In this document: positions 4,056-59,443 of the stretch, piece by piece | Layout of the letters: each line of letters begins with the position of its first letter | How positions within the stretch are numbered: position 1 is the first letter of the stretch | IMG/VR virus record: IMGVR_UViG_3300027749_002876 | Span: 460,566 to 524,565 of that record | DNA: 64,000 nt | Direction: 5' to 3' (one strand) | Program-made: the position numbers and the translations under genes | The notes under the pieces: generated by a model | Seen by the model: the letters and a program-made list of their open reading frames with translations, nothing else | Database searches by the model: none | Told to the model about the DNA's origin: nothing

Positions 4056-5624
4056 TTAACGTGTCTTACGTTTTTTACGACCTGCACCACCCGTATCAGT
4101 ATCAACGGGTTCAATTGTTCTAGGTTCTTTCCTACGTTTTGGATCAACAATATCAGCCGCCGCAACAGTTACGTCATCGCCGTATTCATCAGATTGAACT
4201 ACATCACCTGTAGCACCATCTGGACCTGGATCTTCATAGTCTTGTGCATTTCTACCCAATTTGAAACTGAACCCTGCACTACTTGGTTGTTTTGCACTAG
4301 ATTTGTTTTCTAATGTAACAACACCTTCTAGCTTAGATGGCCATTGGGTTGCAAAGGTCAATTCACCGTTAGCATGATAATCAGTGTATTGTTGAATGAA
4401 GTTCATTTCCAAAACTTGTAAGATAGTATCAGCAAACTCAGGTATTGCATTATCTTCATTCACCGCACGTGATATTGTTTTCTTAATTAGATATACTAAT
4501 TTACCACCTTCTGTAGCAACCTCACTATTAACAGTTGCAAGTAAAGGTTGATATGATGCTGGTAATCTAGAGCCATTGTTTATACTATCAATACTTTGTT
4601 GTAATACTTTAGGTGATGTGGTTTCAAATGGTAAAAACTTATGCCATACTTTAGGAATGCTATTCGGATTTACTTTGAATAAAAAATCCATAATCTTAAA
4701 TGCTTGAACGATAGTACTTGGCCCGGTTTCGTCTTTTCCTGCCTGACACAACTCAATAAGTTTAACTGCGTTTTTTAGTTTACCATTACGCTTGATATCA
4801 TCACTAACCTTTAAGCCTGATACAGCAGGAGCCGCTCCTCCTCCGGTGCCTTTACTTGAAATGTTTAAGCTATGACTTGTTCCTGGATTAGTAATAGTAG
4901 CATAACTATCAGCAATATTATTGTTAGCCGCACTCGGAAAGTTTAATACTAGTGAACCCATATCACCGCCTAGCCATTCTAGGAATTGACGTTTTCTAGG
5001 GAAGCGAGTACGGTCATATAATAATGCTAGTACACCTAAGTATTCACCGGCATAATCAACAATGGCCTTACGTTCTTTTTCTTTTTCTTTTGTTACGTAG
5101 TTTTCAGGTAGTTGAACATATTCACCTGACACAATATAAGTAGCAAGTTGTTGTACTACTTGTCCGTAATCTGTACTAGCTAATACTTGATTGTTCTCAA
5201 TAGTATCGTATAAGTCTGATGCTGGGATATTTCTATCTGTGATTTTAATCAATGATGGTTTTAATAAAACAGATTCTTTTGTACTACCACCAAATTCTTC
5301 ATTCTTAGCTAACTGTGCCATTGGGATTTCTCTACCATCTTTGGTTATAATAGTAATCTTTTCACCGATAAAATCACCTGAATCTTTAAGTTGAGTTAAC
5401 CGATTTACTTCGCTAGCTTTGATATAAATATCTTCACCGGTATAGTTATCAACAAATGGTTTATTAGTTTTTATTTTATTGATTAACAAATTCCATCTTT
5501 CAGGTTTTTTATTAATCTGTGTTGGAGTTAAACCGTTAGCAAACAAAGTAGAAGGAGCGTTAGGATCCTTCTTTTTAGCTTCATCCATAGCTAAGTTTTC
5601 AAGTAATGTTAATAAATCACGCAT
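4056..5624 (-). CDS. Late protein, putative head-internal; possible PD-(D/E)xK-like nuclease domain
   Basis: 522 aa; ATAAATA 6 nt before ATG; N-terminus MRDLLTLLE; IADSY...ISSKG motif; basic C-terminal tail. Confidence 0.6.
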   Translation of the reverse strand: MRDLLTLLENLAMDEAKKKDPNAPSTLFANGLTPTQINKKPERWNLLINKIKTNKPFVDNYTGEDIYIKASEVNRLTQLKDSGDFIGEKITIITKDGREIPMAQLAKNEEFGGSTKESVLLKPSLIKITDRNIPASDLYDTIENNQVLASTDYGQVVQQLATYIVSGEYVQLPENYVTKEKEKERKAIVDYAGEYLGVLALLYDRTRFPRKRQFLEWLGGDMGSLVLNFPSAANNNIADSYATITNPGTSHSLNISSKGTGGGAAPAVSGLKVSDDIKRNGKLKNAVKLIELCQAGKDETGPSTIVQAFKIMDFLFKVNPNSIPKVWHKFLPFETTSPKVLQQSIDSINNGSRLPASYQPLLATVNSEVATEGGKLVYLIKKTISRAVNEDNAIPEFADTILQVLEMNFIQQYTDYHANGELTFATQWPSKLEGVVTLENKSSAKQPSSAGFSFKLGRNAQDYEDPGPDGATGDVVQSDEYGDDVTVAAADIVDPKRRKEPRTIEPVDTDTGGAGRKKRKTR

Positions 5625-5685
5625 AATGAGTATTTATGCTTTTAAACAGATTTTGATATTTAAACCATTGCCTAATAGGCAAGTG

Positions 5686-6825
5686 TTAACTCAACATGAG
5701 GTTAGCCTCACGGCTAACATAATTGTCATAGTCTTTTGCAAGTAATAACACCGTATCATGTGGTGTGTTAATATTCCTTGCTACACGGGCTCTAACATAC
5801 TTGCTTACATTTTTTGCAAGTAACATCAATGTTTCAGGTGGAGTGCTTCGATTTGATGCTACATTCATTTGAACATCTACGACTGGGTCTTTTGCAAGTA
5901 ACATCAATGTTTTAGGTGGGGTGCTTGGATTTGATGCTACTAACTCTCTAACATCTATATCCTTATCTTTTGCTAGCAACATCAATTGTTCGGATGGAAC
6001 TTCTTCCCGATCGGCAATTAATTTTTTTGTTTTTAATGGCATTTTAGATACATCAATTTTAGAGAAGTCGTAATGTGCTCTAATAGCTGATTGTGTATCC
6101 AAATAACTGCTACTACGTAGACGATAGTTGCCTTCAGGACTATTAGAATTTGCAAACTTACAAAATTTATCAACTACTTCTCTAAAGCCAGCTACATTAG
6201 TTCCGTACGCATTATCTGGAAAAAGTACCATATGATTTTTGTAATAATATGGCTTTATCAATATTCGAGCCAATGGGTTATCAATATTTTTATCATTTTC
6301 TCTAATCAAGTATGCAATGATTGCTCCGTTTTTAATGTCTGCTGGTATATATTTATTATTAACAGTCGGACCGTCATCTAAATCCATACATGAAACCCAA
6401 CCACGGTCTGTACTCATACCTGCAATATCAATCGGATCTCTTGAAAACACCACCTCAAGTGGAGAAGCCTGCCGTGTCGCGGCCCTAATTGGGTCATTTG
6501 CAAATTTATTTAATAACTTTTTATCCTTGATTAATTTTCCAATTTTTATTTTTTTACTTGGATCACTAGATTTTTTTGCCAATCCATGCTTATAGTCATC
6601 AATTTCATACCCAAGATTAGAAATTGCATTTTGTAGTTCTTTTTGAGTGGATGAAATTTCTTTACCTGAATCGGAAGATTGTACTTCTAGAGGTGCATAA
6701 ATCCGAGATTTTCCATTAAACACATTATCGTGTATATTAGCATCGTACTCTGACCCTAAATCTTTGTATAATTTTGCAATTTGTTCAGGTGTTAGTGCTT
6801 CAATTAAAAATTCTGTGGCTCTCAT
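5686..6825 (-). CDS. MRAxEF-leader protein with C-terminal LRV/HEAT-like repeats
   Basis: N-terminus MRATEFLIE; 26-aa repeats LMLLAKD...VASNxxTP; ATAAGTA motif upstream. Confidence 0.7.
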   Translation of the reverse strand: MRATEFLIEALTPEQIAKLYKDLGSEYDANIHDNVFNGKSRIYAPLEVQSSDSGKEISSTQKELQNAISNLGYEIDDYKHGLAKKSSDPSKKIKIGKLIKDKKLLNKFANDPIRAATRQASPLEVVFSRDPIDIAGMSTDRGWVSCMDLDDGPTVNNKYIPADIKNGAIIAYLIRENDKNIDNPLARILIKPYYYKNHMVLFPDNAYGTNVAGFREVVDKFCKFANSNSPEGNYRLRSSSYLDTQSAIRAHYDFSKIDVSKMPLKTKKLIADREEVPSEQLMLLAKDKDIDVRELVASNPSTPPKTLMLLAKDPVVDVQMNVASNRSTPPETLMLLAKNVSKYVRARVARNINTPHDTVLLLAKDYDNYVSREANLMLS

Positions 6826-6833
6826 ATTAGTAC

Positions 6834-7325
6834 TTATGCTTTAAACAAATCCTGGTGCTTAAACCACTTGCGCTTACTGTGAGCACCTTTTAATGAAATT
6901 CTATGTTTCTTTAATTTATCTCGGAATACAAAGAAGCTAGGACCATGACTCATTAGAGGTTGTTTACCTCGTTGAAGTCTTTCCATTCCTTGAATATCCC
7001 ATTGATATTGATGGCACATTTCGTGTGCTAATACTGTGATAAGCCACTGCTTACAGTACCACTTGTCCATCACTCTTATTTTACAGTAGCTCTTAGTCCT
7101 ACTAGGCATTTCTAATGAACCGTAACACATGCCCCAATATTTTCTACAACGTGGCATAACTTCAATCTCAGGCATTATTAGCTTGTTATTAAATATTGTT
7201 TTATTCAGCATCCTATAAAGTGATATAACTTCATCACGGTTGGTTCTATAACAAAGACGTTTTTGATATGTGATTGGTGGCAATTCCTCACGCATAAGGT
7301 CGATAATAGAAGTTTTTTTGAACAT
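6834..7325 (-). CDS. SprT-like zinc metalloprotease
   Basis: VLAHEMCH (HExxH) plus SHGPSF. Confidence 0.8.
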   Translation of the reverse strand: MFKKTSIIDLMREELPPITYQKRLCYRTNRDEVISLYRMLNKTIFNNKLIMPEIEVMPRCRKYWGMCYGSLEMPSRTKSYCKIRVMDKWYCKQWLITVLAHEMCHQYQWDIQGMERLQRGKQPLMSHGPSFFVFRDKLKKHRISLKGAHSKRKWFKHQDLFKA

Positions 7326-7424
7326 AATGTATTTATGATACTATTTAAATACGAATAATACACATATTACGGAAAAAATATATAACTTCTCTATCCGATT
7401 AAATATATGTTTAGGAGAAATCAA

Positions 7425-7745
7425 ATGGAAATTATTATAGGATTGGTCATTTTGGCCGGAGTAGCTTGGTTCTTTTTCATGCGTAATGATAAGAAATCAG
7501 ATGAGGTAGTCACATCTGCTACAGATAACGTCACTGCCCCGTACAAAGTACCAGAACCATCCGCTACTACACCAATACCGTTGGTCGCAGAAGTTATCCC
7601 AGCTGGTACGGAAGCTACAATGGCTGCACCAACTAAAGCTAAAGCACCAGCAAAGCCAAAGGCGCCGGCTAAGCCAAAAGCAACAACTGCTAAAGTTTCG
7701 GCAAAAGCTAAAGCACCTGCAAAGCCAAAAGCACCAAAAGCTTAA
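7425..7745 (+). CDS. Membrane-anchored protein with Lys/Ala/Pro-rich tail
   Basis: AGGAGA RBS before MEIIIGLVILAGVAWFFF TM helix; KAPAKPK repeats. Confidence 0.7.
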   Translation: MEIIIGLVILAGVAWFFFMRNDKKSDEVVTSATDNVTAPYKVPEPSATTPIPLVAEVIPAGTEATMAAPTKAKAPAKPKAPAKPKATTAKVSAKAKAPAKPKAPKA

Positions 7746-8446: not shown

Positions 8447-8751
8447 TTAACATCAGCTTCAACTTTAACCTGTAGAGGGAATCCCTGACTACGTGCATCA
8501 AGTGTAACTTCAATCCCGCGCTGTTCTGCAATCTCATATGGTAATACAGCAACTATAGCACTACCCTGTTGATGAATATTTTCAGTTAGTGATGTAGCAG
8601 TATCTTGATTATAATTAAAATACCCGATTAAACTGTTAACCACAAAATTCATACTGGTAACTTCATCGTTCATATAAATGACTCTATAGAGTGGTGGTTC
8701 AGCAAGATTTATGTTTGGGCTGATTTTAATTTTAATATCTGTTTTGGACAT
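8443..8751 (-). CDS. clpS: Clp protease adaptor ClpS
   Basis: PPLYRVIYMNDEVTSMNFVV...IHQQGSAIVAVLPYEIAE...FPLQV. Confidence 0.9.
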   Translation of the reverse strand: MSKTDIKIKISPNINLAEPPLYRVIYMNDEVTSMNFVVNSLIGYFNYNQDTATSLTENIHQQGSAIVAVLPYEIAEQRGIEVTLDARSQGFPLQVKVEADVN

Positions 8752-8815
8752 AGTGTTAAGTTAGTTATATGTGCGAGTGTTACCCCGCACATTTATTTAT
8801 ATAAAATTTATTATA

Positions 8816-9335: not shown

Positions 9336-11231
9336 TTAATTAGATTCTTTTACTTCCGCATCAACTACATTGTCATTAGCATTCTTTGCTTCTGTAGCTT
9401 CTTTGGCTTTTTGTTCCTCATCATATTTGATTTTTGTGATGGGACTAATTGCTTCGTATAAGTCTTTGATTTTGTTTTCAATTTCTTCTACGTCTGTTCC
9501 AGCTAATGCAACTTCCAATGCATCAATGCTATTAGATGCTTTTTCTTTTTCTTCTGCTGTAACACTATCTCCGTGCTTCTCGTAGTCTTTACGGAAACTG
9601 TTCAATGTTGATTCGCCGTTATTTTTTGCTTGAATAAATTTAACTTGTTTGGCATCAGATTCAGCATTTGCTTCAGCATCATTAACCATTTGTTGAATTT
9701 CTCTTTCAGTTAGTCCTGAATCAGATTTGATAGTAATCTTATTCTCTTTGCCTGTACCTTTATCTTTGGCACTTACATTAAGAATACCATTTGCATCAAT
9801 ATCTAACGTGACTTCAATTTGAGGAACACCACGCATTGATGGAGGAATGCCCTCTAAATTAAATTCACCTAATATCTTATTGTATGTAAACAAATCACGT
9901 TCACCTTGTGCAACCTTAATAGTTACTGCAGGTTGATTGTCTTCCGCTGTACTAAACACTTGACTATGCTTAGTTGGGATAGTTGTATTCTTCTTAATCA
10001 ATTTAGTGAATACACCGCCACTTGTTTCAATACCCAAACTCAGTGGTGTCACATCCAATAACAATACGTCAGTGCGTTCACCGGCTAATACACTACCTTG
10101 AAGTGCCGCACCTGCCGCCACTGCTTCATCAGGATTAACATCTTTGCGTGGTGCCTGACCAAACAACTTCTCAACTGTTTCTTGTACTTTGGGCATACGT
10201 GTCATACCACCAACAAGAATAACCTCATCAATGTCAGCAATTTTAACACCGGCATCTTGTATAGCTTGTTGACATGGTTTGATACTACGTTGAATCAATT
10301 CATCAACTAACAATTCTAATTTAGCACGACTTAATTTAACATTTAAGTGTTTAGGTCCACTAACATCGGCTGTGATATATGGCAAGTTAACATCTGTTTG
10401 AGCACTACTACTTAACTCAATCTTTGCTTTCTCAGCCGCATCTTTCATCCGTTGCAATGCCAATACATCTTTGGTTAAGTCAATACCGTTGTCTTTCTTA
10501 AACTCATCAACTAAGAAGTCCATGATACGTTGGTCAAAGTCTTCGCCACCTAAGAACGTATCACCATTTGTTGATAATACTTCAATTTGTGTTTCACCAT
10601 CAACATCTGCTAATTCAATAATACTTACATCAAATGTACCACCACCTAAGTCATAAACAGCAATCTTACGGTCCGTTTTATCTTTTTTATCTACACCATA
10701 TGCTAGTGCAGCCGCAGTAGGTTCGTTGATAATACGCAATACTTCTAGTCCTGCAATACGTCCTGCGTCTTTAGTTGCTTGACGTTGGCTATCATTGAAG
10801 TAAGCTGGAACTGTAATAACTGCTTGAGTAACTGTTGTACCCAAATAGTCTTCAGCAGTCTTTTTCATCTTACGTAATACTTCAGCACTGATTTGCGGTG
10901 GTGCTAATTTTTGCCCATTAGACTCAACCCATGCATCGCCATTGTCTGCCTTAATGATTTTGTATGGCATCAAGTCAATATCTTTTTGAACCGCTTGTTC
11001 TGTGAACTTACGACCAATCAATCGCTTGGCAGCATAGATTGTATTCTTTGGGTTTGTAACTGATTGACGTTTGGCACTTGCACCTACTAATATCTCATCA
11101 TTGGCATAGGCAACGATTGAGGGTGTAGTTCTTGCACCTTCACTGTTTTCAATTATTTTGGGGATTCCGTTTTCAATAACGGCTACGCAGGAATTTGTGG
11201 TTCCGAGGTCTATTCCAATTACTTTGCTCAT
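9336..11231 (-). CDS. dnaK: Chaperone DnaK (Hsp70)
   Basis: [37 protein letters not shown]; start placed at 11231 after AAGGAG. Confidence 0.98.
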
Positions 11232-11286
11232 TTTTTCTCCTTTATAAAGCAAGATTCTAATTTCAGACCCGATAATCGGCATCTGA
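11229..11286 (-). promoter_or_regulatory. ROSE-like RNA thermometer in dnaK leader
   Basis: Hairpin UCAGAU-G-CCGA-UUA-UCGG-GUCUGA, then UCUUGCU-UUAUAA-AGGAGA; ATAAATA motif at 11292-11298 just upstream. Confidence 0.7.
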
Positions 11287-11329: not shown

Positions 11330-11545
11330 TTAAAAGTCTTTCTTAGGAAGACTTTGGTCTCTTAAAAATTTCTGCCACCTACGTTTAGCTTGACTTTTTG
11401 CTAGTTTACGTTTGATAGTAGGTTTTACGAATTCTTGACGGTCACGTACCTCTTGTAAGGTGCCGTAGTCTGCGATAACTTTTTTAAATTTCCGCAATGC
11501 TTTGTCTACGTTTCCATCCTGAACTAAAACTTTCCTACCTCTCAT
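11330..11545 (-). CDS. rpsU: Ribosomal protein bS21
   Basis: NVDKALRKFKK...EVRDRQEFVKPTIKRK. Confidence 0.9.
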   Translation of the reverse strand: MRGRKVLVQDGNVDKALRKFKKVIADYGTLQEVRDRQEFVKPTIKRKLAKSQAKRRWQKFLRDQSLPKKDF

Positions 11546-12744
11546 ACTATAACTGTTGGCTCCAAAATTTGTTTTCTATCTATATTTATGTTTAGTACAT
11601 TATTATCACGGTACTTTTTAGTGTAGAACATGTGAGGCATCAATACACGCTCAATTTCAGTATGCAATCCACGTGCCCCTGTCTTAAGTGACAATGTATT
11701 CTCTGCTAATTGGTCTAGTGCATCTACCGTAAAGCTTAAATCAATGTTGTCCAAGCTTAACAAGTACTTGTATTGGTCAATATAGTTATTTTTGATTCCG
11801 GTCAATACTGTGATTAACTCATCTTTTGTCAAATCTTCCACATTGACTGTTGTAGTAAAACGACCAATGAACTCGGGAATCATACCAAATTTAACTAAGT
11901 CATCTGGACTAACATTACTTAAATTACCATCAGTGTTGGCGTTTTTAATTTGAGCGCCAAATCCAATACTTGTACCGTTTTCACGATTGCTAACAATACC
12001 CTTTAATCCAACAAATGCACCGCCAGCAATGAATAAGATATTCTTAGTATTGATTTCAATCATATCTCCACCGGGATGTTTACGTCCACCACCAGCTGGA
12101 ATACGACAAACAGTACCTTCAACCAGTTTAAGTAATGCTTGTTGAACACCTTCACCTGACACATCACGTGTGATATTAGCACTTTCACCTTTACGGGCAA
12201 TCTTGTCAATCTCGTCAATGAATACAATGCCACGCTCGGCTAGTTTAACGTCACCACCTGCGGCATTGAGTAGCATACTAATCATTGATTCAACATCATC
12301 ACCTACATAACCTGCTTCTGTAATACTTGTTGCATCTGCTACGATGAAGGGCACTTTAAGATATTTTGCTACTGTTTTAGCAAGTAAGGTTTTACCTGAA
12401 CCAGTTGGTCCTACTAGTAATACATTACCTTTAGAAATCTCTAAGTCTTTAGGTGGTTTGTTGATACGTTTATAGTGATTAGCAATAGCCACACTTAATA
12501 CTTTTTTAGCATTGTGTTGACCAACTACATGAGTATCAAGGAAATCTTTAATAGACTCTGGATCATATGATACTGCATCTTCTATTACAAATTCGTTCTT
12601 GGATTCATCGTCTACCATTAATGTATTGCATAATTCTACGCAATCACTACAGATAGCTACTTCTTCACTTACAATCAATTTTTTTACATTGTCTTTGTGG
12701 TTATCACAAAAGGAACAACGGTTGAGTTTATTTTCTGTTGACAT
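11542..12744 (-). CDS. clpX: ATP-dependent Clp protease ATP-binding subunit ClpX
   Basis: CSFC...ICSDC zinc finger, [31 protein letters not shown] loop, TGARGL. Confidence 0.97.
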
Positions 12745-33035: not shown

Positions 33036-33911
33036 ATGAGAATTAACGAATTTATAACAGAGTCTAGTAAGATTTGCCCACAATGTGGAATGAGAGGTTG
33101 CACGTGCAAACCTGGAAAATGTAATTGCAAACCAAAGCCTGGTTATCCAAAACAGGTTGATGAAGCCGCTAATCCAGCACAACAAGCCGCTATAGCTATT
33201 GCTATGAAAAAAGCTGGTAAAAAGCCAAAAAATATGCATGAAGAAGATGAGGGTATGTTTGGTAGATCCAAAAACGATAAACGATATTTAGATAAATTTG
33301 ATCCAACTGAAGTTATGAATATCAGTGATGATCCTAGTAAGGCACATAAAACAACGGGCAAGGGTTCATTAAGAACATCTAAGAAAGATTTAGAATTTGC
33401 ATTTGGACCACCCGGAGAAGATGATACATGGGTTTTAGAATTTAAGAATGGTTTAATTGCCACTATATACCCACAATCTAACAGTGGTGGCATGGATTGG
33501 ATCATAGGTGGTAATCATACAAACACTGAAGATTTTGTACATATGGCTTATTCAGCCGCACTTGATGAAAAACTTGAAGAGGATTGGAACAAGGTCAACC
33601 AGAAAGACAAAACATCTGGTATGAGCCGTAAGGCAGTAAAAGCATATCGTAGAGAAAATCCAGGTAGCAAATTACAAACAGCAGTTACTACTAAACCTAG
33701 TAAATTAAAGCCTGGATCAAAAGCTGCCAAACGCCGTAAGAGTTTTTGTGCTAGAATGAGTGGTAACAAAGGTCCTATGAAAAAGCCTAATGGTAAACCT
33801 ACTCCCAAAGCATTAGCACTACGTAGATGGAATTGTGAGAGTGTAGAGCAAATGGAAGAATTGGTAATGTTAGCAGAACAATTTATCCGCAATCACAAGA
33901 CTAAACTTTAA
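33036..33911 (+). CDS. MRxxEF-leader modular late protein (putative head-internal polyprotein)
   Basis: MRINEFITE; Cys-rich module; AANPAQQAAIAIAMKK module; basic RRKSFCARM...ALRRWNC module; ATAAATA at 32973-32979. Confidence 0.65.
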   Translation: MRINEFITESSKICPQCGMRGCTCKPGKCNCKPKPGYPKQVDEAANPAQQAAIAIAMKKAGKKPKNMHEEDEGMFGRSKNDKRYLDKFDPTEVMNISDDPSKAHKTTGKGSLRTSKKDLEFAFGPPGEDDTWVLEFKNGLIATIYPQSNSGGMDWIIGGNHTNTEDFVHMAYSAALDEKLEEDWNKVNQKDKTSGMSRKAVKAYRRENPGSKLQTAVTTKPSKLKPGSKAAKRRKSFCARMSGNKGPMKKPNGKPTPKALALRRWNCESVEQMEELVMLAEQFIRNHKTKL

Positions 33912-51588: not shown

Positions 51589-52542
51589 TTAACCGTAGGC
51601 TGCGGCTGCTAATTGGGTTCTAGCAGTACCTACACCAGTAGTGTCACTAGCAACTACACCTGTATTACTTACTAGATTGGTTGTTGATACTGCAACAGTT
51701 GTAGTACCATAACCAAATATAGCGTTATCAGTACCATAACCAGCGGCAGCTAGGTTATACCTAGCTGTACCTACACCAGTGGTGTCAGTGGCCACTACGC
51801 CTGTATTACTTACTAGATTAGTTATGGCTGTTCTACCAGCACCTCCGCTGGTAGTACCAAATCCAAATATAGCTTTATCTGTGCCGTATCCGGCAGCCGC
51901 CAAGGCATTTCTAGCAGTACCTACACCTGTGGTGTCTGTGGCTACAACACCGGCGTTACTTACTAGGTTAGTCACGGCTGTGGATGCACTATTGTCAAGT
52001 CCGTAACCAAATACAGCTTTGTCAGTGCTGTACCTTGCGGCTGCCAGGTTAACTCTGGCAGTACCTACACCTGTGGTATCTGTGGCCACTACTCCTGTAT
52101 TACTTACTAGATTAGTCATTGATACTCTGGCAAAAGAAGAATTATCTCCATACCCAAATATAGCTTTATCTGTACCATAACCAGCAGCCGCCAACGAATA
52201 TCTAGCAGTACCAACACCTGTGGTGTCAGTGGCTACAACACCAGCGTTACTTACTAGATTAGTCATGGATACAACGGTGCTGCCATCAGTAGTCCCGTAA
52301 CCAAATATAGCTTTATCTGTGCCATAGCCTGCGGCTGCTGGTCCGAATCTAGCAGTACCTACTCCTGCAGTATCAGTTGCTACTACACCTGTGTTTGATA
52401 CTAAATTGGTCATTGACACACCGGCAAAAGTAGGATTACCTACATATCCATAACCAAATATAGCTTTATTACCACTCGGTCCGGGAGAAACAGTACATCC
52501 AGCACCAGTAAATGTTATACCACCTGTTATTGTAATTGACAT
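51589..52542 (-). CDS. Six-repeat beta-propeller-like virion/adhesin protein (paralogue 1)
   Basis: 6 x ~48-aa KAIFGYG-var-TNLVSNTGVVATDTTGVGTAR-xx-LAAAGYGTD. Confidence 0.75.
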   Translation of the reverse strand: MSITITGGITFTGAGCTVSPGPSGNKAIFGYGYVGNPTFAGVSMTNLVSNTGVVATDTAGVGTARFGPAAAGYGTDKAIFGYGTTDGSTVVSMTNLVSNAGVVATDTTGVGTARYSLAAAGYGTDKAIFGYGDNSSFARVSMTNLVSNTGVVATDTTGVGTARVNLAAARYSTDKAVFGYGLDNSASTAVTNLVSNAGVVATDTTGVGTARNALAAAGYGTDKAIFGFGTTSGGAGRTAITNLVSNTGVVATDTTGVGTARYNLAAAGYGTDNAIFGYGTTTVAVSTTNLVSNTGVVASDTTGVGTARTQLAAAAYG

Positions 52543-52551: not shown

Positions 52552-53121
52552 TTATTGAAAGATATGATGATTCTGTTCCCCGTATATCTTAATATATTTA
52601 CCAGCAAGCATATCTGCCATTGCTTCTATTGGACTACCTGGATAACTATCACCCGGATCAATCATATCTAATTCACCTTGACGGACATGTACCAATTCGT
52701 GGAATACTGTGCGTAGTATATCTACTAGGTTACGATTTTTAGCATATACCCAAATACTATCATCACCCATTTTATGTCCTCCAGTATGATGATTATTTTG
52801 TGCTTCATCAGTATCCATACTGAGTTCAATACGTGGTTTGTTTTTTAGATGTAATCGTTTACATGCCCAATCACAGAACTTATCAACTTCTTGTTGTAGT
52901 TCACTACTATCACCCTCGTCTAGTTTATTCTTAATCCAACTATCCGGACTACGATGGAATTTCTTTACGAACAAGTCATGTAGTGCTTTACCAGTGATAC
53001 TATGTTTGCTAGCAATTCTTCGCATCAATTTATCAATGGTATTATAATCGTGCTTTTCCAAACTAGGCAATTTTCTTGCTAGTTCTTTTGCGGCTGATTC
53101 GTATAGTTCTATTGATTTCAT
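52552..53121 (-). CDS. Late protein with HExxH metallopeptidase motif
   Basis: Start revised to MKSIELYES, 5 nt after ATAAATA; LRTVFHELVH...PIEAMA. Confidence 0.7.
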   Translation of the reverse strand: MKSIELYESAAKELARKLPSLEKHDYNTIDKLMRRIASKHSITGKALHDLFVKKFHRSPDSWIKNKLDEGDSSELQQEVDKFCDWACKRLHLKNKPRIELSMDTDEAQNNHHTGGHKMGDDSIWVYAKNRNLVDILRTVFHELVHVRQGELDMIDPGDSYPGSPIEAMADMLAGKYIKIYGEQNHHIFQ

Positions 53122-53133
53122 ATTAGTATTTAT

Positions 53134-53224
53134 GCTCACTTTTGATTTCACAGTAGCGAATTGTTACATCAGGCCAGCAGCCGGCCCACACTTTATAACG
53201 CAAAGGTCCTAAGGTAGTGTGTTC
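53134..53224 (-). ncRNA. Candidate structured RNA of unknown class
   Basis: GC-richer intergenic: CACACU/AGUGUG, GGCCGG/CUGGCC, UGAU..ACA/UGU..AUCA stems; loop UUCGC can pair with 3' GUGAG. Confidence 0.45.
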
Positions 53225-54037
53225 TTAATCATTCGTTTTACATTTAGCACGTTTACTATTAGTTAATAGACCGTAATCTACTGGCCATTCTTTACCAGGC
53301 TGTAATTCTTTAGCATTAGCAGGGAAATGATACTTTACACCTGCATATTCTTGTATCTGTGCTAATGGTGCACGAAATTGTGTTAAATCATTACCCAAGT
53401 TAACATATGGTTTCTTATGTGGGAATTGCCATCCAGCAACTTCTTTTGTAGTATTATTAATTACAATCTTGTAGTACCCATGAGGCACAACTACTCCGTT
53501 ACCAATCTTCTCATTGCTAGGTCCATAGTATGCACCTACATAGATAGTAAACGGTTGCTTTAATTGTACTGCCCAGCCACGAATACTTGTTTCTAATAGT
53601 TTCCATATACCACGATTTAAACTACCATGTTGCGGATACATATTAGTCATTAAGAAACTTTCGTATTCTACAATTTGACTATAACTTAAATCACCATCTG
53701 GTGCGGCATGACCTTTGTCATAACCTGTAGCTACATAATCATCAGGCTTTGCACCATCTTTAATACTAGCATCAGCAACAAAAGCGTTTGTACGTGGGAA
53801 ACATCCTAATGCGTTTTCTGGTTTTAATGTATATGCTACATAGACTGGAATCTTAGCAGGAGCATCATATGCTACAAGATATGCTTCACGGCATATAGGT
53901 TGTGATGGTCTTTGTGTTTGTGCGAATCCATATGGACTATGTACTTGACATTGTTGTGGTGGTAATGGTATACGTTGATCCCAAGCAAAGGCATTTATTG
54001 ATAGCATTACTGCTAGTATTGTTAATAGTTTTTTCAT
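53225..54037 (-). CDS. Secreted DNA/RNA non-specific endonuclease (NucA/EndoG family)
   Basis: Signal peptide; YDKGHAAP, ESFLMTNMYPQ, LNRGIW..LE, VPHGYYK. Confidence 0.9.
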   Translation of the reverse strand: MKKLLTILAVMLSINAFAWDQRIPLPPQQCQVHSPYGFAQTQRPSQPICREAYLVAYDAPAKIPVYVAYTLKPENALGCFPRTNAFVADASIKDGAKPDDYVATGYDKGHAAPDGDLSYSQIVEYESFLMTNMYPQHGSLNRGIWKLLETSIRGWAVQLKQPFTIYVGAYYGPSNEKIGNGVVVPHGYYKIVINNTTKEVAGWQFPHKKPYVNLGNDLTQFRAPLAQIQEYAGVKYHFPANAKELQPGKEWPVDYGLLTNSKRAKCKTND

Positions 54038-55230
54038 AATAATATATTTTTGTAATCAACGAAATTTGCATGTCTATCTTCTAGACCTTTGCCGGCAGGG
54101 TTAATTTTTTGTGTTACTGCTTTTGTATCGTTGAAGTTATTTATACTAGGTTTGACACGTGTTTGCCAATACCATACAGCAATTTTGGCTGCAACGTCTG
54201 GTCGTTCTGCTAATTCAGGTTGTTGTAGTAGAGGAATATTTAATGCTGTTTGTGCCATGCGATAATTATCACGACCAGTCAATTGAATGAATCCACGACC
54301 ATGGTATTTTTCACCATCTCCGGGTTGTTTGTTACCTAGTATTTTAGCAGTACGTGGTGCAAACTTAGGATCATATTTTTTAGCAAAATAGTTTGGACCC
54401 ATGCTTTTTTCTTTTAACCTACTGAAGTTCCAAGATTCATGTTTAGTTTGACCCATAAGTTGTGCCAATTCAGTGCCAACAATGCCGGCTTGTCTAGCAG
54501 TTTTTTGCATCATTGTTTCTTCTTGTGGATTATTACTTAGTGTGGTTATATTGTTTGCTACAGCTTTAGGTTCAGGTTGTGCCGGTTCATCTTGTTTATT
54601 TTGTGAATTATAATTACCTATCATACTACCCACTGTAGCGGCACCTAAACTACCTAGTGCAAATCCCCTGCGAGATATATCGTCAGCTATTATGTTACGA
54701 TTCTTTACTTTGCTAATCTCAATACTGATTGGTGTATTGGTAGTCATTGCCCTAAAGATTTTTTCAGTTTCACCCTGACCTGGTTTAAGTTTTGCTGATA
54801 TTATGTTGAATCGTAACCTATTCTTTTTAACACCAATGAACTCTCCTATTAATACTTCATAGTTAGGATAGTTAGGTGACAAATCCACTTTGGGATTTTC
54901 TTGTTCTTCTAAATAAAATACATCTTCATCCGGTGATGTTTGTAATGTTGGATGTGCTGTTAATACAATATATGCATTTTCACCATGATTATCTTTTTGC
55001 TTAGACATTGCTACTCCTAAATCAGGAGTTCTAACTACAAAAGTAATATATGGCATTTTTATTAGTTCATGTCCACGTTTAGTTTCTAATTTATGTAATA
55101 CTCGAAGGACTTTTTCTATAGGAATATTACGTTTTGAACCGTCACTTCTATCATTAATGAAGTGTTTGCTCACAACTAAATATCCGTCTGCAAAGGGTAT
55201 TTCTTTATTAATAAATTCTGTTGCTCTCAT
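54034..55230 (-). CDS. MRAxEF-leader modular protein with C-terminal GH19 chitinase/lysozyme
   Basis: MRATEFINKE; AQLMGQTKHES, YHGRGFIQLTGRDNY, AVWYW, TQKIN...GLEDR. Confidence 0.85.
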   Translation of the reverse strand: MRATEFINKEIPFADGYLVVSKHFINDRSDGSKRNIPIEKVLRVLHKLETKRGHELIKMPYITFVVRTPDLGVAMSKQKDNHGENAYIVLTAHPTLQTSPDEDVFYLEEQENPKVDLSPNYPNYEVLIGEFIGVKKNRLRFNIISAKLKPGQGETEKIFRAMTTNTPISIEISKVKNRNIIADDISRRGFALGSLGAATVGSMIGNYNSQNKQDEPAQPEPKAVANNITTLSNNPQEETMMQKTARQAGIVGTELAQLMGQTKHESWNFSRLKEKSMGPNYFAKKYDPKFAPRTAKILGNKQPGDGEKYHGRGFIQLTGRDNYRMAQTALNIPLLQQPELAERPDVAAKIAVWYWQTRVKPSINNFNDTKAVTQKINPAGKGLEDRHANFVDYKNILL

Positions 55231-55231
55231 A

Positions 55232-57595
55232 TTAGCTCATTATAGGTAATACTTCAATGTCCGTACCTTGATCGTACCCATTGTCTCTTAGCCATTGAAT
55301 AGCTACACGATTAGCATCACGTTGAACATTGCCTATGCCACTAAAACGATGTACTTCACGTCCGTCTGCCATTACTTTCCAAGCACCGGTGAATGAACCA
55401 GGTATTTGTCTTTGTTGTTGAATAGCATTAGTGCTATCTGGGGCGGGTGCAGGTTGATCCATACGTGATAGACCATACCCTCGTCTATCAATACCCTGAT
55501 CCAATAACCAAGCTTGAGCTTTTTCTCTCGCATCTTCAACTGATGTAGCTTGGAATGTATAAACTATACTTTGGTCTGCTGTTCTGTATAGTTTGTAATC
55601 TTGTGTTTCGCCACTTGGTTCATTAGTAGCACGAATTGGTTGTGCTAGTATAGGTTCACTATCACCAACACGTCTTATACCAAATATGTCTCTAGCTTGT
55701 CTTGCTGGAAATCTGTGTGGACCGTGTTCAAGATAATCATTTAGTCGAATCAATGCTTCTCTATCATTAGTAATGCCTTCAGCATCCTCTACCTTTCTAT
55801 TAGTATCCAAATTAAATATTTCATATTTTGGTTTATCATCTTTAGGTTCTTCAAACTTACGAACTGGATAAACAGCGGCAGCAGTTAATGCACCTAAACG
55901 AATGTTCCATTCATCTGATGCTTTTTGTAGTGCTTCTTCTTTACTTGTAGCAACAACTTCAATACTTGCACCACTACGGCCACGACCTTCTTTATCAACA
56001 CGATACCAATACTTTTTGCCAACTTCATTGTCAGCCTTTACTTTACGTTCTATCTGTGCTTGTTTAACAAAGCTACGTAATGCAGCCTTTGGTAACTCAC
56101 CTGCGGCATACTTAGCAAAGTATTGAATCGTATCTGTATTATCTTTACTTGGCTCTAATAACTTATAAAGTTTTTTTAGATATTCTTTTCTATACTTCTG
56201 TGGGTCAACTGCGGCATCCAGTGCTACAACAAATCGTAACAGTGTGTTCTCAATCTTAGGTATATCAGTATCCAACCAATCACCTCCCGGGCTACGAAAC
56301 TCAATGTAACCATCTTTAGTATTGATACTTGTATATTTGGCTGTTGAACCACTATGAACTAGTTTGCTAGCAATATCACTTAGTCCACTTTTCATTCCAT
56401 CTAACAACTTTTTAGCGTTTGCTGGATTTTCTCTAATGTTATCTTTAACTTGTTTCAACGCACTCTTGCAAAAAGTGTTACCTTCACGGTCGAACTCTTT
56501 CAATATATATTCGTCACCTAATAGTAATGCTAGTTTAACATAGTCAAGCTTTTCTCTACTGAAGTCAGGAACACTTACGTTGATATGTAAGCCGGTACTA
56601 TCATTCGTATAGCAACCTGTTTTCTTAGCCCAAGCAACAACTTTGTTGAAGTCAGTTATCATTTCATCTATTGGCATTGGTGGACTTACAAACTCTAATC
56701 CAGCAGAACTGTAATCATCTGGCTCTAAGCTACCATCAGGTTCAACTACATAGTGACCTGCTTCTCTACGAGCACCGTGATAACGTTCGCTTGTATTGAC
56801 TGGCTTACCAATCATTCTACTGAACTCATCACCAACATCATCAACGCTTAAGTCACCACCATTGTCGGGATAAAACCAATGTGGCCAAGTAATATCATAG
56901 TTACTTTCAACGTCTTGCATTGTATAAAGACCTTCACTTTCTAACCAATCATTTTCGTCTGGCCAATCAGTTTCATCCATCCACTTTTCACGTGCATTGT
57001 CATACAATCTAGATTGTTCATCCCATTCTTCTTCAACAAACTGGTCGAACTTTTCACTTGCTAAATCGTGTGCTTCTTTCCAGTGTTTCCAAGCTTCATT
57101 GCCTTCTGTTTCACTGCGTTTAGATATCTTACCTGCTTTGTTCGCCGCTTCCTTTTGTTCATCTGTTAAGCCTAATTGGTCATACGCTTCATCAAGTGCG
57201 GCATCTTCATCAAACTCACCTTCACTTTCAATGTATTCACGTAGATAATCTTTACCTTCACTATCCCATTGTTCGCTACGTCTTTCATCTGCCCATTCGT
57301 GATAACCTTCAGTTAGCTCATCAACTAAACTATCTACTTCTCTAAGACCATTGTAGTTACGGTCATAGAAAAAGTTGCGTATGTTTTGAATACTACCAGC
57401 ACTTTCATCACTATCATAGTCAGCTTCTGGATCTCCGTCACCTTCTTCTCGTTTAACGTTTGGAACAATCATCTCAAATTCCATACCAGCCTGAGCACCA
57501 GTCTTAGCAGCCTCTTGCTTTAACCGTGTAGGATTCATTGCTACTTCGTCAAGTATCTCTGTATCTTCTAATATTATAAAGTCTGTTGCTCTCAT
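55232..57595 (-). CDS. MRAxEF-leader putative amidoligase (COOH-NH2 ligase) protein
   Basis: MRATDFIILE; GMEFE, EPDGSL, GLEFVSP, TNDSTGLHIN, KYTSIN, IEFRSPGG. Confidence 0.8.
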   Translation of the reverse strand: MRATDFIILEDTEILDEVAMNPTRLKQEAAKTGAQAGMEFEMIVPNVKREEGDGDPEADYDSDESAGSIQNIRNFFYDRNYNGLREVDSLVDELTEGYHEWADERRSEQWDSEGKDYLREYIESEGEFDEDAALDEAYDQLGLTDEQKEAANKAGKISKRSETEGNEAWKHWKEAHDLASEKFDQFVEEEWDEQSRLYDNAREKWMDETDWPDENDWLESEGLYTMQDVESNYDITWPHWFYPDNGGDLSVDDVGDEFSRMIGKPVNTSERYHGARREAGHYVVEPDGSLEPDDYSSAGLEFVSPPMPIDEMITDFNKVVAWAKKTGCYTNDSTGLHINVSVPDFSREKLDYVKLALLLGDEYILKEFDREGNTFCKSALKQVKDNIRENPANAKKLLDGMKSGLSDIASKLVHSGSTAKYTSINTKDGYIEFRSPGGDWLDTDIPKIENTLLRFVVALDAAVDPQKYRKEYLKKLYKLLEPSKDNTDTIQYFAKYAAGELPKAALRSFVKQAQIERKVKADNEVGKKYWYRVDKEGRGRSGASIEVVATSKEEALQKASDEWNIRLGALTAAAVYPVRKFEEPKDDKPKYEIFNLDTNRKVEDAEGITNDREALIRLNDYLEHGPHRFPARQARDIFGIRRVGDSEPILAQPIRATNEPSGETQDYKLYRTADQSIVYTFQATSVEDAREKAQAWLLDQGIDRRGYGLSRMDQPAPAPDSTNAIQQQRQIPGSFTGAWKVMADGREVHRFSGIGNVQRDANRVAIQWLRDNGYDQGTDIEVLPIMS

Positions 57596-57615
57596 TTTTA
57601 TTTCATCTTTTTTGT

Positions 57616-58566
57616 TTAACCGTAGGCTGCGGCTGCTAAACTATCCCTAGCAGTACCTACACCTGTAGTATCAGTAGCAACAACGCCTGTGTTTGATACT
57701 AAATTGGTTATTGCAGTTACTGAGCCACTATTACCATATCCAAATATAGCTTTATCAGCTCCATACCCGGCTGCTGAAAGAGCATACCTAGTAGTACCTA
57801 CACCTGTAGTATTTGTAGCAACAACACCGGTGTTACTTACTAAGTTGGTTGTTGCGGAAGGACCTACACTTGTGACATTTCCATACCCAAATATTGCTTT
57901 ATCAGTACCATACCCTGCGGCTGCTAGATAATATCTAGCAAGACCAACTCCTGTTGTATCTGTAGCAACTACTCCTGCATTACTTACTAAATTAGTCATT
58001 GACACTCCGCTACCGACAAGACCATATCCAAATATAGCTTTGTCAGTACCATAACCTGCAGCCGCAAGGGCAAACCTAGCAGTACCAACACCAGTGGTAT
58101 CTATGGCAACTACACCAGTGTTTGATACTAGATTGGTCATTGACAATCCGGTAAAACTTATGTTAGCACCATATCCAAATATAGCTTTATCGGTGCCATA
58201 TCCAGCGGCTGCAAGATAACCTCGCACTGTACCTACACCCGTTGTATCGGTAGCTATTACGCCTGTGTTTGATACTAAGTTAGTTAGTGAATATGCAACG
58301 GTATAACTAGCATTAAACCCATATCCAAATATAGCTTTGTCAGTACCATAACCTGCTGCCGCAAGGCCTTCTCTAGCAGTACCCACACCTGTAACATCAT
58401 TACCAACTACACCCGTGTTAGATACTAGATTAGTTATTGCTGTAACTGTACCGGTAGTTCCATATCCAAAGATAGCCTTTTGAGTGCCACCACCTCCACC
58501 CCCGCCACCAGGTGTAAACGTCCATCCGCCACTAAATGTTAATCCACCTGTTATTGTTACTGTCAT
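57616..58566 (-). CDS. Six-repeat beta-propeller-like virion/adhesin protein (paralogue 2)
   Basis: Same 6-repeat framework as 51589-52542; poly-Gly linker. Confidence 0.75.
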   Translation of the reverse strand: MTVTITGGLTFSGGWTFTPGGGGGGGGTQKAIFGYGTTGTVTAITNLVSNTGVVGNDVTGVGTAREGLAAAGYGTDKAIFGYGFNASYTVAYSLTNLVSNTGVIATDTTGVGTVRGYLAAAGYGTDKAIFGYGANISFTGLSMTNLVSNTGVVAIDTTGVGTARFALAAAGYGTDKAIFGYGLVGSGVSMTNLVSNAGVVATDTTGVGLARYYLAAAGYGTDKAIFGYGNVTSVGPSATTNLVSNTGVVATNTTGVGTTRYALSAAGYGADKAIFGYGNSGSVTAITNLVSNTGVVATDTTGVGTARDSLAAAAYG

Positions 58567-58567
58567 A

Positions 58568-59443
58568 TTATGTTGCCTTTTTCAACTTATTCCATTTATC
58601 ATATATATAGTTTTTCAACTCTATTGTATTTTTAATTTCATTGTCGTTCATGTATTTAATCAACTTCACAGCACTAGCTCTATCTCCTGCATCTGGCTTA
58701 CGTGCGTTACTTAAATCAACACCTATGTTATGATCGCCTGTAGTATCGTGATACCATAACAGGTTCTTTAGTTGTCTCTTTGCTCTATCGCTTAGATATT
58801 CCTCTTTGTCTTTTTCAATCAACTCAATCCAAGGCTTAACAAAGTCAGTTGGCTTACGAGTAGCACCTCTAGTTGGTTGACCCTTCAATACATCTTTGGC
58901 TTGACTTGGCTGAACACTCTTACGTGTATCTAATAATCTCCAAGCACTCTCATTTGTATAAAGATATGCTGGTATATCTTTTTGTTTAGCTGTTATCATT
59001 ATTTGCCGTGTTTGTGGGCTACGATATTCATTTTGTTCTTTTAATAAGATATGTATCTCTGTAACAGGTGTCATTGGTATACTTGGCTCTTTGCTGAACA
59101 CTCTATCTTCTGATTCACGTGTTCTAGTACCATCACTTTTTAACCAAGCACTATTCCAATAGTCTATTGGCTTAACAATGTATCTACTGTTGAACCAATC
59201 ACCGTTCATTTTAAACATTACACCACCCGTACCAACATATCTATGATAGTCACCAGTCGGTGTTCTTGTTAAACTTAAGAAGTATGGATAACCTTTTGGT
59301 GCATAATCTTCTTCGCTACTATTACCTGTTACACTTGCTAGTTCAAAGTTACCTGATTGTAGAATCTTTAATGCGGCATTGGTACTAGTGTAATGAAATA
59401 CTACGCTGGTTGCACGTTCTATTAAAAACTCGTTTGCTCTCAT
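58568..59443 (-). CDS. MRAxEF-leader protein, possible ADP-ribosyltransferase fold
   Basis: MRANEFLIE; VFHYT, FLSLTR, RESEDR. Confidence 0.5.
   Translation of the reverse strand: MRANEFLIERATSVVFHYTSTNAALKILQSGNFELASVTGNSSEEDYAPKGYPYFLSLTRTPTGDYHRYVGTGGVMFKMNGDWFNSRYIVKPIDYWNSAWLKSDGTRTRESEDRVFSKEPSIPMTPVTEIHILLKEQNEYRSPQTRQIMITAKQKDIPAYLYTNESAWRLLDTRKSVQPSQAKDVLKGQPTRGATRKPTDFVKPWIELIEKDKEEYLSDRAKRQLKNLLWYHDTTGDHNIGVDLSNARKPDAGDRASAVKLIKYMNDNEIKNTIELKNYIYDKWNKLKKAT

What the first reader, a model, noticed from the sequence alone, without database searches (positions are those of the whole stretch)
4056..59443. Shared N-terminal MRAxEF..E leader on unrelated late proteins: a capsid-targeting cargo system
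Seen: MRATEFLIE (6825), MRINEFITE (33036), MRATEFINKE (55230), MRATDFIILE (57595) and MRANEFLIE (59443), with looser MRDLLTLLE (5624) and MKSIELYE (53121). They head otherwise unrelated proteins: LRV repeats, GH19 lysozyme, amidoligase, ART-like, nuclease-like and metallopeptidase. Known: T4 internal proteins use a ~10-aa capsid-targeting sequence (MKTYQEFIAE) removed after Glu by prohead protease gp21. Inference: a portable tag lets this phage load a large, variable arsenal of enzymes into the head for co-injection with the DNA, far beyond T4's few internal proteins.
Basis: partly seen in the sequence, partly recalled or inferred. Interest (0 to 1): 0.75.

Follow-up and report, generated by a model that had tools for sequence, protein, structure and literature searches.

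The report
Capsid-loading tag on jumbo-phage proteins
A nine-residue N-terminal tag (MRATEFxxE) heads many unrelated proteins of this freshwater jumbo phage and of over a hundred related viral contigs, and it most likely works like phage T4's capsid-targeting sequence, loading enzymes into the head for injection with the DNA.

Summary
All seven N-termini sit at the stated coordinates, and the strict motif heads 9 proteins of the record against 0.03 expected by chance.

The phage is a distant T4 relative. Outside the window it has the T4 head-gene order: portal, 74-aa protein, 276-aa protein, gp21-type (S77) prohead protease, scaffold, gp23-type capsid protein.

The tag keeps the residues that matter in T4's MKTYQEFIAE: the Phe needed for targeting and the I/L-x-E needed for cleavage. 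The same L/I-x-E signature marks the expected protease substrates:
- The scaffold has 20 sites, the 99.8th percentile of the proteome.
- The capsid protein's only four sites all lie in its first 44 residues.

The tag's DNA pattern hits more than 119 IMG/VR contigs, always at an ORF start, on at least 53 cargo families. These include GNAT, NUDIX, SOD, lysozymes, ADP-ribosyltransferases and a ParB-like nuclease.

One cargo folds as a DarT/Tpt1-like ADP-ribosyltransferase. Its homologues in non-T4-type phages lack the tag.

No virion data exist, so packaging and cleavage are inferred. A ClpXP-degron reading is unlikely but not excluded.

I rate it a new variant of a known kind.

The 524-kb record is probably a complete ~348-kb genome joined to a fragment of a relative.

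The parts
5686..6825 (-). 379-aa LRV-repeat protein. Tag MRATEFLIE is encoded at 6799-6825. A late-like box ATAAGTA lies at 6831-6837, 5 nt before the ATG, with no Shine-Dalgarno sequence.
4056..5624 (-). 522-aa protein of unknown fold with a basic C-terminus. Its diverged tag MRDLLTLLE is encoded at 5598-5624. The box ATAAATA lies at 5631-5637, 6 nt before the ATG. The counterparts in segment B (genome 66506) and in two IMG/VR contigs start MRAHQFLTE and MRATEFLTE.
   Evidence: model unusable
33036..33911 (+). 291-aa protein with a C-terminal DUF6321 domain. Tag MRINEFITE is encoded at 33036-33062. The segment-B counterpart starts MRIKEFINE.
52552..53121 (-). 189-aa protein with an HELVH (HExxH) motif. 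Its diverged tag MKSIELYE is encoded at 53098-53121. The box ATAAATA lies at 53127-53133, 5 nt before the ATG. Relatives start MRIGEVLSE, MRATEFLSE and MRATEFITE.
54034..55230 (-). 398-aa protein with a C-terminal GH19 lysozyme/chitinase domain. The 10-residue tag MRATEFINKE is encoded at 55201-55230. Its start abuts the stop codon of the upstream gene.
55232..57595 (-). 787-aa protein with an Amidoligase_2 domain. The 10-residue tag MRATDFIILE is encoded at 57566-57595.
58568..59443 (-). 291-aa protein whose N-terminal domain has a DarT/Tpt1-like ADP-ribosyltransferase fold. Tag MRANEFLIE is encoded at 59417-59443. The invariant residues H17, Y66 and E110/E112 are candidates for an H-Y-E triad.
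54037..62628 (.). An 8.6-kb variable island present in segment A of the record, where the related segment B has about 650 bp. It holds three tagged genes plus two MTVTITGG-type proteins and a ferritin-like gene. A secreted non-specific endonuclease gene (53225-54037) lies at its lower edge. No convincing terminator was found on the - strand.

Best explanation
The leader M-[RK]-A-x-[EDQ]-F-[ILV]-x-E is the capsid-targeting sequence of a T4-superfamily jumbo phage.

Inferred mechanism, by homology with T4:
1. The unstructured tag binds the prohead scaffolding core while the shell assembles, so any protein carrying it is enclosed.
2. The gp21-type serine protease then cuts after the Glu of [ILV]-x-E. 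This frees the mature cargo inside the head, while the scaffold is chopped up and lost.
3. The cargo leaves with the DNA at the next infection.

The cargo includes lysozymes, a DarT-like ADP-ribosyltransferase, an amidoligase, peptidase-like and nuclease-like proteins and small basic proteins. In relatives it also includes GNAT, NUDIX, SOD and ParB-nuclease proteins.

Shown here: the tag, its statistics, its spread, its portability, the protease and head module, and the L/I-x-E signature on the expected protease substrates.

Inferred only: binding to the core, cleavage, presence in virions and injection.
For: - Enrichment: 9 observed against 0.03 expected. Looser forms bring the record's total to 16 genes in at least 10 unrelated families.
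- Protease and head module: an S77 prohead protease (94 bits) lies in the order portal, 74 aa, 276 aa, protease, scaffold, gp23-like capsid protein. The cultured relatives PA5oct, Vibrio 2.275.O and E. coli Turkey5 have the same order.
- Match to T4: the T4 CTS is MKTYQEFIAE, with residues 4 and 7 needed for targeting and 8 and 10 for processing, and gp21 cuts after L/I-x-E (PMC8442874, PMC9026906). Among 122 IMG/VR tags, the unconstrained position 7 is I in 76, L in 32 and V in 14.
- Substrate signature: the scaffold has 20 [LI]xE sites (99.8th percentile). The capsid protein's only four sites are at residues 5, 17, 32 and 41. The protease itself has LKE at residues 5-7.
- Spread: the pattern hits more than 119 IMG/VR contigs at ORF starts. 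Ten related 175-367-kb records carry 1-6 strict copies each, against none for the reversed pattern.
- Clustering: one relative has ten tagged genes in a 9-kb island.
- Portability: the ART-like cargo has MKKFNEFANELAE in what appears to be a T4-type Vibrio phage and MNLNE in Salicola SCTP-2. It has no such leader in Dickeya JA13 or Pseudomonas Lu11.
- Protein-level selection: synonymous sites of Ala, Glu and Phe codons vary as in the rest of the genome.
- Structure: the tag is disordered and precedes the fold.
- Cargo domains (ART-PolyVal, ParB-like nuclease, lysozymes, amidoligase) are, from my own knowledge, of the kind seen in proteins that phages deliver with their DNA.
Against: - There is no proteomic or structural evidence that any of these proteins is in a virion or is cleaved.
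- The protease-peptide complex prediction gave no answer.
- ClpP co-occurs with the tag as consistently as the S77 protease does (6 of 6 complete relatives each), and ClpP lies just downstream of two tagged genes.
- Only 7 of 16 tagged genes have the late-like box directly upstream. That box also precedes ClpX, Hsp70 and S21, so it is not a clean marker of 'late structural' genes.
- Codon 2 is AGA in 20 of 23 Arg cases against 24% in the background, so some constraint at the nucleotide level or recent common descent also acts.
- The closest cultured relatives lack the exact MRxxEF form.
- Mature cargo proteins are not clearly depleted in [LI]xE.
Confidence: 0.75

Rival explanations
1. The leader is an N-terminal degron or recognition tag for the phage's own ClpXP. 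It would time the destruction, or the ClpX-dependent unfolding, of a set of phage proteins.
For: ClpP (window 3398-3985) and ClpX (11542-12744) are encoded here. ClpP lies directly downstream of two tagged genes. ClpP is present in all 6 complete relatives that carry the tag. Some known ClpX N-terminal signals begin Met-basic (own knowledge).
Against: The tag's conserved residues match the T4 CTS and the gp21 cleavage rule, not any defined ClpX motif. The same L/I-x-E rule marks the scaffold and the capsid propeptide. A tag-like start sits on the core-position protein beside the prohead protease. Variants of the tag occur on the same cargo in an apparently T4-type Vibrio phage.
Confidence: 0.05
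2. The conserved 5' end acts mainly at the RNA level, as a translation-initiation enhancer for leaderless or weakly led late mRNAs. The peptide would be a by-product.
For: Three tagged window genes have the promoter box 5-6 nt from the ATG and no Shine-Dalgarno sequence. Codon 2 is AGA far more often than the background.
Against: Dozens of other genes with the same leaderless architecture have unrelated N-termini. Tagged genes also occur behind ordinary Shine-Dalgarno sites and in coupled operons. Synonymous positions of Ala3, Glu5, Phe6 and Glu9 vary as in the background, while the amino acids are fixed.
Confidence: 0.07
3. The tag targets proteins to the virion or another phage structure but is not cleaved, or it directs them to another place such as the tail, the cell pole or export after injection.
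For: In T4, targeting and cleavage are separable: Asp at position 10 blocks cleavage but not packaging (PMC9026906). Several tags here have 10 rather than 9 residues, or end imperfectly.
Against: Glu at the last tag position is essentially invariant, as is an aliphatic residue two positions before it. That is the cleavage rule, not merely a binding motif.
Confidence: 0.08
4. The shared start is only a relic of repeated gene-start duplication or recombination (a shared promoter and start cassette) and the peptide has no function.
For: Some tagged genes share upstream DNA, for example the pair at genome 493601 and 37866. There is also the AGA bias at codon 2.
Against: Most tagged genes have unrelated upstream sequences. 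The peptide is conserved across genomes of 36-48% GC and across at least 53 cargo families.
Confidence: 0.03

Closest known systems
[quoted passage not shown]
   Same: It is a tag of about 10 residues at the extreme N-terminus. The pattern is the same: M-basic-x-x-(Q/E)-F-(I/L)-x-E. It ends in the gp21 L/I-x-E cleavage rule. The genome has an S77 protease and a gp20-67-68-21-22-23-like gene order. T4 also packages an ADP-ribosyltransferase, Alt (PMC9026906).
   Different: The consensus is one residue shorter (MRATEFITE against MKTYQEFIAE). There are about 11 tagged genes in the ~348-kb genome against T4's few. Most cargo are large enzymes rather than small basic proteins. The tagged genes are scattered and also clustered in islands. 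Nothing here has been shown experimentally.
Hypervariable internal-protein loci of T-even phages: diverse proteins that share only the CTS
   Same: One conserved tag sits on unrelated, fast-changing cargo. The 8.6-kb island present in one genome and absent in its relative, and the ten-gene island in another relative, behave in the same way.
   Different: The scale is larger: at least 53 cargo families in a capped sample of contigs. The lineage is different: uncultured freshwater jumbo phages whose capsid protein is 62-67% identical to those of PA5oct, the 121Q-like E. coli phages and Vibrio 2.275.O.
Ejection or inner-body proteins of phiKZ, 201phi2-1 and SPN3US, processed by a diverged gp21 homologue
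   Same: Many head-internal proteins carry N-terminal propeptides that are cut after Glu and are then injected (PMC9026906, PMC7411985).
   Different: From my own knowledge, those propeptides are long and varied and their cleavage motif differs. Here the tag is a short, uniform, sequence-searchable leader, and the protease is a canonical S77 member (94 bits).
Polyvalent proteins of phages and conjugative elements (own knowledge: Iyer, Aravind and colleagues, 2017)
   Same: The effector repertoire overlaps: ART-PolyVal, ParB-like nuclease, peptidases and lysozymes. The presumed role is also the same, delivery with the DNA.
   Different: In polyvalent proteins many effector domains are fused into one giant protein. 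Here each effector is a separate gene with its own tag.

Membership tests
T4-type capsid-targeting sequence (CTS) system | A short leader at the extreme N-terminus, shared by otherwise unrelated proteins | tested here: met
   9 observed against 0.03 expected. No similarity beyond the leader among the window proteins. At least 53 cargo families in IMG/VR contigs.
T4-type capsid-targeting sequence (CTS) system | The leader keeps the T4 targeting residue (Phe7) and the processing residues (I/L8, Glu10) | tested here: met
   M-R-A-T-E-F-[ILV]-x-E aligns with MKTYQEFIAE with one residue fewer. Position 7 is I, L or V in 122 of 122 tags. The T4 data come from PMC8442874 and PMC9026906.
T4-type capsid-targeting sequence (CTS) system | A gp21-type (Peptidase_S77) prohead protease in the same genome, within a T4-like head module | tested here: met
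   PF03420 at 94 bits at genome 353734-354165. Portal, protease and gp23-like capsid protein were identified by PHROGs and PDB matches, in T4 gene order. The protease is present in 6 of 6 complete relatives.
T4-type capsid-targeting sequence (CTS) system | The protease cuts after L/I-x-E. The scaffold is degraded and the capsid protein loses an N-terminal propeptide. | tested here: inconclusive
   The sequence signature fits: the scaffold has 20 sites (99.8th percentile), and all four capsid-protein sites lie in residues 1-44 and none in the other 356. Cleavage itself cannot be observed with these tools.
T4-type capsid-targeting sequence (CTS) system | Tagged proteins are found inside virions with the tag removed | not testable with these tools
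   No cultured isolate is known for this phage. The cargo has no homologues in phages with published virion proteomes.
T4-type capsid-targeting sequence (CTS) system | The tag alone is enough to package a foreign protein | not testable with these tools
   This needs a fusion experiment. The protease-peptide complex prediction gave no answer.
T4 internal proteins (IPI/II/III type cargo) | Small, highly basic, DNA-associated proteins | tested here: not met
   Only the 124- and 131-aa proteins at genome 258302-259068 look like this, with KGYKRK tails. The window cargo are 189-787-aa, mostly enzyme-like proteins.
ClpX N-terminal degron | A match to a defined ClpX N-terminal motif, and dependence on ClpXP | not tested
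   Only co-occurrence could be examined, and it does not discriminate.
DarT / Tpt1-like (H-Y-E type) ADP-ribosyltransferases, for the cargo at 58568-59443 | The ART fold with a conserved His, Tyr and Glu | tested here: inconclusive
   Foldseek probability is 1.00 to DarT structures (E 7e-4), but the TM-scores are low (0.34 by the query, 0.43 to 0.48 by the DarT targets) because the query has two domains. H17, Y66 and E110/E112 are invariant in 8 homologues. There is no sequence-level Pfam or PDB hit.

The most novel reading that the evidence does not exclude
The tag is a sequence-readable address label for a whole uncultured clade of freshwater jumbo phages. Anything that begins M-[RK]-A-x-E-F-[ILV]-x-E would then be an injected protein. 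That would allow a phage's set of injected proteins to be listed from metagenomes alone. It already points to more than 50 families of pre-made effectors delivered at the moment of infection, including a DarT-like ART, GNAT, NUDIX, SOD and ParB-nuclease proteins, lysozymes and an amidoligase. At least one cargo carries a twin-arginine export signal directly after the tag, which would be a two-stage address: capsid first, then host periplasm.
Probability: 0.45. Interest if true: 0.75.

Novelty: new variant of a known kind. Interest (0 to 1): 0.6.

Why it matters
Proteins injected with phage DNA act before any phage gene is expressed. They are therefore prime candidates for anti-defence and host-takeover functions, but they are normally found only by virion proteomics of cultured phages.

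If this tag works as T4's does, it gives a simple sequence rule for finding such proteins in uncultured jumbo phages. It shows that the T4 loading mechanism is old and widely shared in the T4 superfamily. It also reveals a much larger and more enzymatic cargo set than T4's.

The tag may also offer alternative packaging tags for phage-based protein delivery.

Tried and rejected
- Megablast of the cargo island against cultured phages found no match.
- Full-text searches found no paper that mentions the MRATEF leader and none that describes a CTS in this jumbo-phage group.
- The complex prediction of the protease with the first 30 residues of a tagged protein scored 0.01. The tool says not to use this as evidence either way.
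- The AlphaFold model of the 522-aa protein at 4056-5624, built from 4 sequences, had pLDDT 44 and was not used for a fold search.
- tblastn of three cargo proteins against cultured phages, done to borrow virion-proteome evidence, found nothing or only partial hits in cyanophages.
- Co-occurrence of the tag with the S77 protease against ClpP was meant to separate the two readings. Both are present in every complete relative.
- The exact MRxxEF pattern is absent from five cultured relatives. A looser MK-type pattern was needed to find their versions.
- Single-linkage clustering of the cargo merged 60 proteins through shared domains. It was replaced by a rule requiring 60% coverage of both proteins.
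Full report
**1. The observation**

The seventh, MKSIELYE at 53121, is an internal ATG of an ORF whose first possible start is a GTG at 53151. The ATG is the better start for two reasons. It is preceded by GCATAAATACTAAT, the same arrangement as in front of the genes at 6825 and 5624. Relatives of this protein also begin with fuller versions of the tag.

The window is the last 64 kb of a 524,565-bp IMG/VR virus record. Across that record the strict motif heads 9 of 642 called proteins, where 0.03 would be expected from its internal frequency (P about 6e-20).

Looser forms (MRAHQFLTE, MRIGEVLSE, MKISQIIQE, MKLFEMFDE and others) bring the total to 16 genes. With the tag removed, the seven window proteins share no detectable similarity.

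**2. What the cargo proteins are**

- 5686-6825: LRV repeats (Pfam).
- 33036-33911: DUF6321.
- 54034-55230: GH19 lysozyme/chitinase domain.
- 55232-57595: Amidoligase_2 domain.
- 52552-53121: a visible HELVH motif.
- 58568-59443: modelled from eight homologues at pLDDT 82. Residues 1-6 are disordered and the fold starts at residue 14. Its best PDB matches are DarT toxins and Tpt1/KptA, both members of the ADP-ribosyltransferase superfamily. His17, Tyr66 and Glu110/112 are invariant. T4's packaged Alt protein is also an ADP-ribosyltransferase (PMC9026906).
- 4056-5624: could not be modelled (pLDDT 44), so its function remains open.

**3. The context that decides the reading**

The record encodes a Peptidase_S77 (T4 gp21-type) prohead protease at genome 353734-354165, with 94 bits against a cut-off of 27.

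The protease sits in the gene order portal, 74-aa protein, 276-aa protein, protease, 367-aa scaffold-position protein, 400-aa capsid protein. The capsid protein matches solved T4 gp23 structures. This is the T4 order 20-67-68-21-22-23. Pseudomonas phage PA5oct, Vibrio phage 2.275.O and E. coli phage Turkey5 have the same order, and their capsid proteins are 62-67% identical to this one.

In T4 the CTS is MKTYQEFIAE (PMC8442874). Residues 4 and 7 matter for targeting and residues 8 and 10 for processing, and gp21 cuts after L/I-x-E (PMC9026906). The tag here, M-R-A-T-E-F-[ILV]-x-E, aligns with one residue fewer and keeps Phe, the aliphatic residue and the Glu. In 122 tags from other contigs, the position I left free in the search is I, L or V every time.

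The same rule is written on the expected substrates of the protease:
- The scaffold-position protein has 20 [LI]xE sites, 5.45 per 100 residues, the 99.8th percentile of the proteome.
- The capsid protein has four sites, at residues 5, 17, 32 and 41, and none in its remaining 356 residues.
- The protease has LKE at residues 5-7, which recalls T4 gp21's LIE near its own N-terminus (PMC9026906).
- Three of the capsid-protein sites are conserved in cultured relatives.
- By alignment, the T4 gp23 cleavage point falls at about residue 32 of this protein.
- The 74-aa protein in the gp67 position begins MKLFEMFDE. Its relatives begin MKLVELFE, MLKDIFE and MKINDIITE.

**4. How widespread the tag is**

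About one or two hits would be expected by chance (my own estimate). Every hit lies at the start of an ORF.

The 108 complete proteins fall into at least 53 families. Their Pfam domains include GNAT acetyltransferases, NUDIX, Fe/Mn superoxide dismutase, GH19, Phage_lysozyme2, LysM, ART-PolyVal, ParB-like nuclease, ASCH, DUF6321 and DUF6934.

Ten related records of 175-367 kb each carry 1-6 strict copies, against none for the reversed control pattern. In two relatives that I read in full, a looser protein pattern finds 8 and 11 tagged genes. In the second, which has 47.6% GC, ten of them lie in one 9-kb island.

Five cultured relatives lack the MRxxEF form. A looser MK-type pattern finds seven genes in Salicola phage SCTP-2, four of them in a tandem array of 'hypothetical proteins'. 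It also finds the gp67-position gene of PA5oct.

**5. Portability**

The ART-like cargo has different N-termini in different phages:
- MRANEFLIE in this phage.
- MKKFNEFANELAE in the 255-kb Vibrio phage K566, which I take to be T4-type from its size and neighbouring genes. I did not test this.
- MNLNE in Salicola phage SCTP-2.
- Dickeya phage JA13 starts directly with the conserved domain, and Pseudomonas phage Lu11 has an unrelated N-terminus. I take both to be non-T4-type (own knowledge).

So the tag is an add-on that appears tied to the T4-type head machinery. It is not part of the cargo fold.

**6. Rivals**

The phage also encodes ClpX and ClpP. ClpP lies just downstream of two tagged genes and is present in all complete relatives, as is the S77 protease. 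Co-occurrence therefore cannot exclude a ClpXP degron. I rate that reading low, because the conserved residues are those of the T4 CTS and of the gp21 rule.

An RNA-level role is suggested by the leaderless-type promoters and by a strong AGA preference at codon 2 (20 of 23 against 24% in the background). Two findings argue against it. Dozens of genes with the same promoter architecture have unrelated starts. The other synonymous sites of the tag vary freely.

**7. Timing**

[GCT]ATAAATA, which resembles the T4 late promoter TATAAATA (own knowledge), is the most enriched upstream 8-mer, with 55 occurrences against 1.8 expected.

Seven of the 16 tagged genes have it directly upstream. Several others lie in same-strand gene strings headed by one, with no convincing terminators between. 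None follows the other enriched motif, TATAATAGAATCTTA-type, which precedes short ORFs and is probably an early promoter.

The association with 'late' expression is therefore compatible but weak. The same box also precedes ClpX, Hsp70 and S21.

**8. Comparison and verdict**

This works like, and is very probably homologous to, the T4 CTS/internal-protein system. The T-even literature already describes a conserved CTS on diverse cargo (PMC3012670, PMC9026906).

Four things are new:
- The lineage: uncultured freshwater jumbo phages of the PA5oct/121Q/SCTP-2 group.
- The consensus sequence of the tag.
- The number of tagged genes per genome.
- The breadth and enzymatic nature of the cargo.

I found no paper in the library that describes any of this. 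Packaging, cleavage and injection remain to be shown.

Noticed in passing
whole record G000; window 59912-64000 is one copy of the repeat: The 524,565-bp record is probably not one genome. Genome 172,924-177,012 equals 520,477-524,565 (direct, 99.6%, 4,089 bp), so 172,924-524,565 closes on itself as a genome of about 347.5 kb, the size of complete relatives (318-367 kb). Genome 1-172,923 is colinear with it in inverted orientation at 73-91% identity, which fits a fragment of a second phage. The two parts vary independently among public runs: run X3 holds 0.84 of the sampled words of one part and 0.32 of the other, and several runs hold only one part. However, contigs of two runs span the junction, so both phages seem to share the 4.1-kb segment, which contains an HNH endonuclease gene.
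   Followed up: partly
window 5625-5637, 6826-6837, 7326-7336, 53122-53133 and about 56 genes of the record: The distance from the late-like ATAAATA box to the start codon is bimodal. There is a sharp peak at 4-5 nt with no Shine-Dalgarno sequence (56 genes) and a broad peak at 16-27 nt with AGGA. The first class would give leaderless or nearly leaderless mRNAs, which is unusual on this scale for a phage.
   Followed up: partly
window 51589-52542, 57616-58566, 59451-61457; also genome 218-220, 269-278, 287-288, 357-362 and 452-454 kb: A second shared N-terminus, M-x-[IV]-T-[IV]-T-G-G-[IL]-T-F-[ST]-G-G, heads a large paralogous family with about 145-nt internal repeats. Four copies lie directly after the capsid gene. 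The 668-aa member has three Laminin_G_3 domains. These may be head or fibre decoration proteins.
   Followed up: no
window 3398-3985, 9336-11282, 11330-11545, 11542-12744: The phage encodes ClpP, an Hsp70/DnaK, ribosomal protein S21 and ClpX in one neighbourhood. ClpP is conserved in all complete relatives. The GenBank record of PA5oct marks its ClpP as detected by ESI-MS/MS.
   Followed up: partly
codon 2 of tagged genes, e.g. window 6820-6822 and 59438-59440: Arg2 of the tag is encoded by AGA in 20 of 23 cases, against 24% AGA among Arg codons in the background. The other synonymous sites follow the background. This could be an A-rich second-codon effect on initiation, or recent common descent.
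   Followed up: partly
L012:4467-4493 (-), IMG/VR contig 3300043451_000093: One tagged protein continues straight after the tag with a twin-arginine-type signal: MRATEFVTE, then MDRRGFLRGLAGAGAMAATGAAQA. This may be a cargo that the host exports after injection.
   Followed up: no
L172 (Salicola phage SCTP-2, MF360958.1, 208780-214398): A cultured relative has a tandem array of 'hypothetical proteins' (genes 213 and 216-218) that each start MK[IV]ND[IL]LxE. Three more such genes lie elsewhere in the genome. This is a ready experimental proxy for the tag system.
   Followed up: partly
window 53225-54037 and 6834-7325: Two neighbours of tagged genes lack the tag. One is a DNA/RNA non-specific endonuclease with a Sec-type signal peptide. 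The other is a SprT-like metallopeptidase behind a leaderless-type late box.
   Followed up: no
window 1791, 2930, 3285, 22367 (gene starts): A second enriched upstream motif, TATAATAGAATCTTAGAC-type, precedes 19 short ORFs with a median length of 90 aa. It is probably the early promoter class.
   Followed up: partly
genome 258302-259068 (outside the window; L009): Two adjacent tagged proteins of 124 and 131 aa end in a shared basic tail, K[PG]FKGYKRK. Their family is the commonest cargo in the IMG/VR sample (18 of 108). They are the best candidates for true T4-style internal proteins.
   Followed up: no
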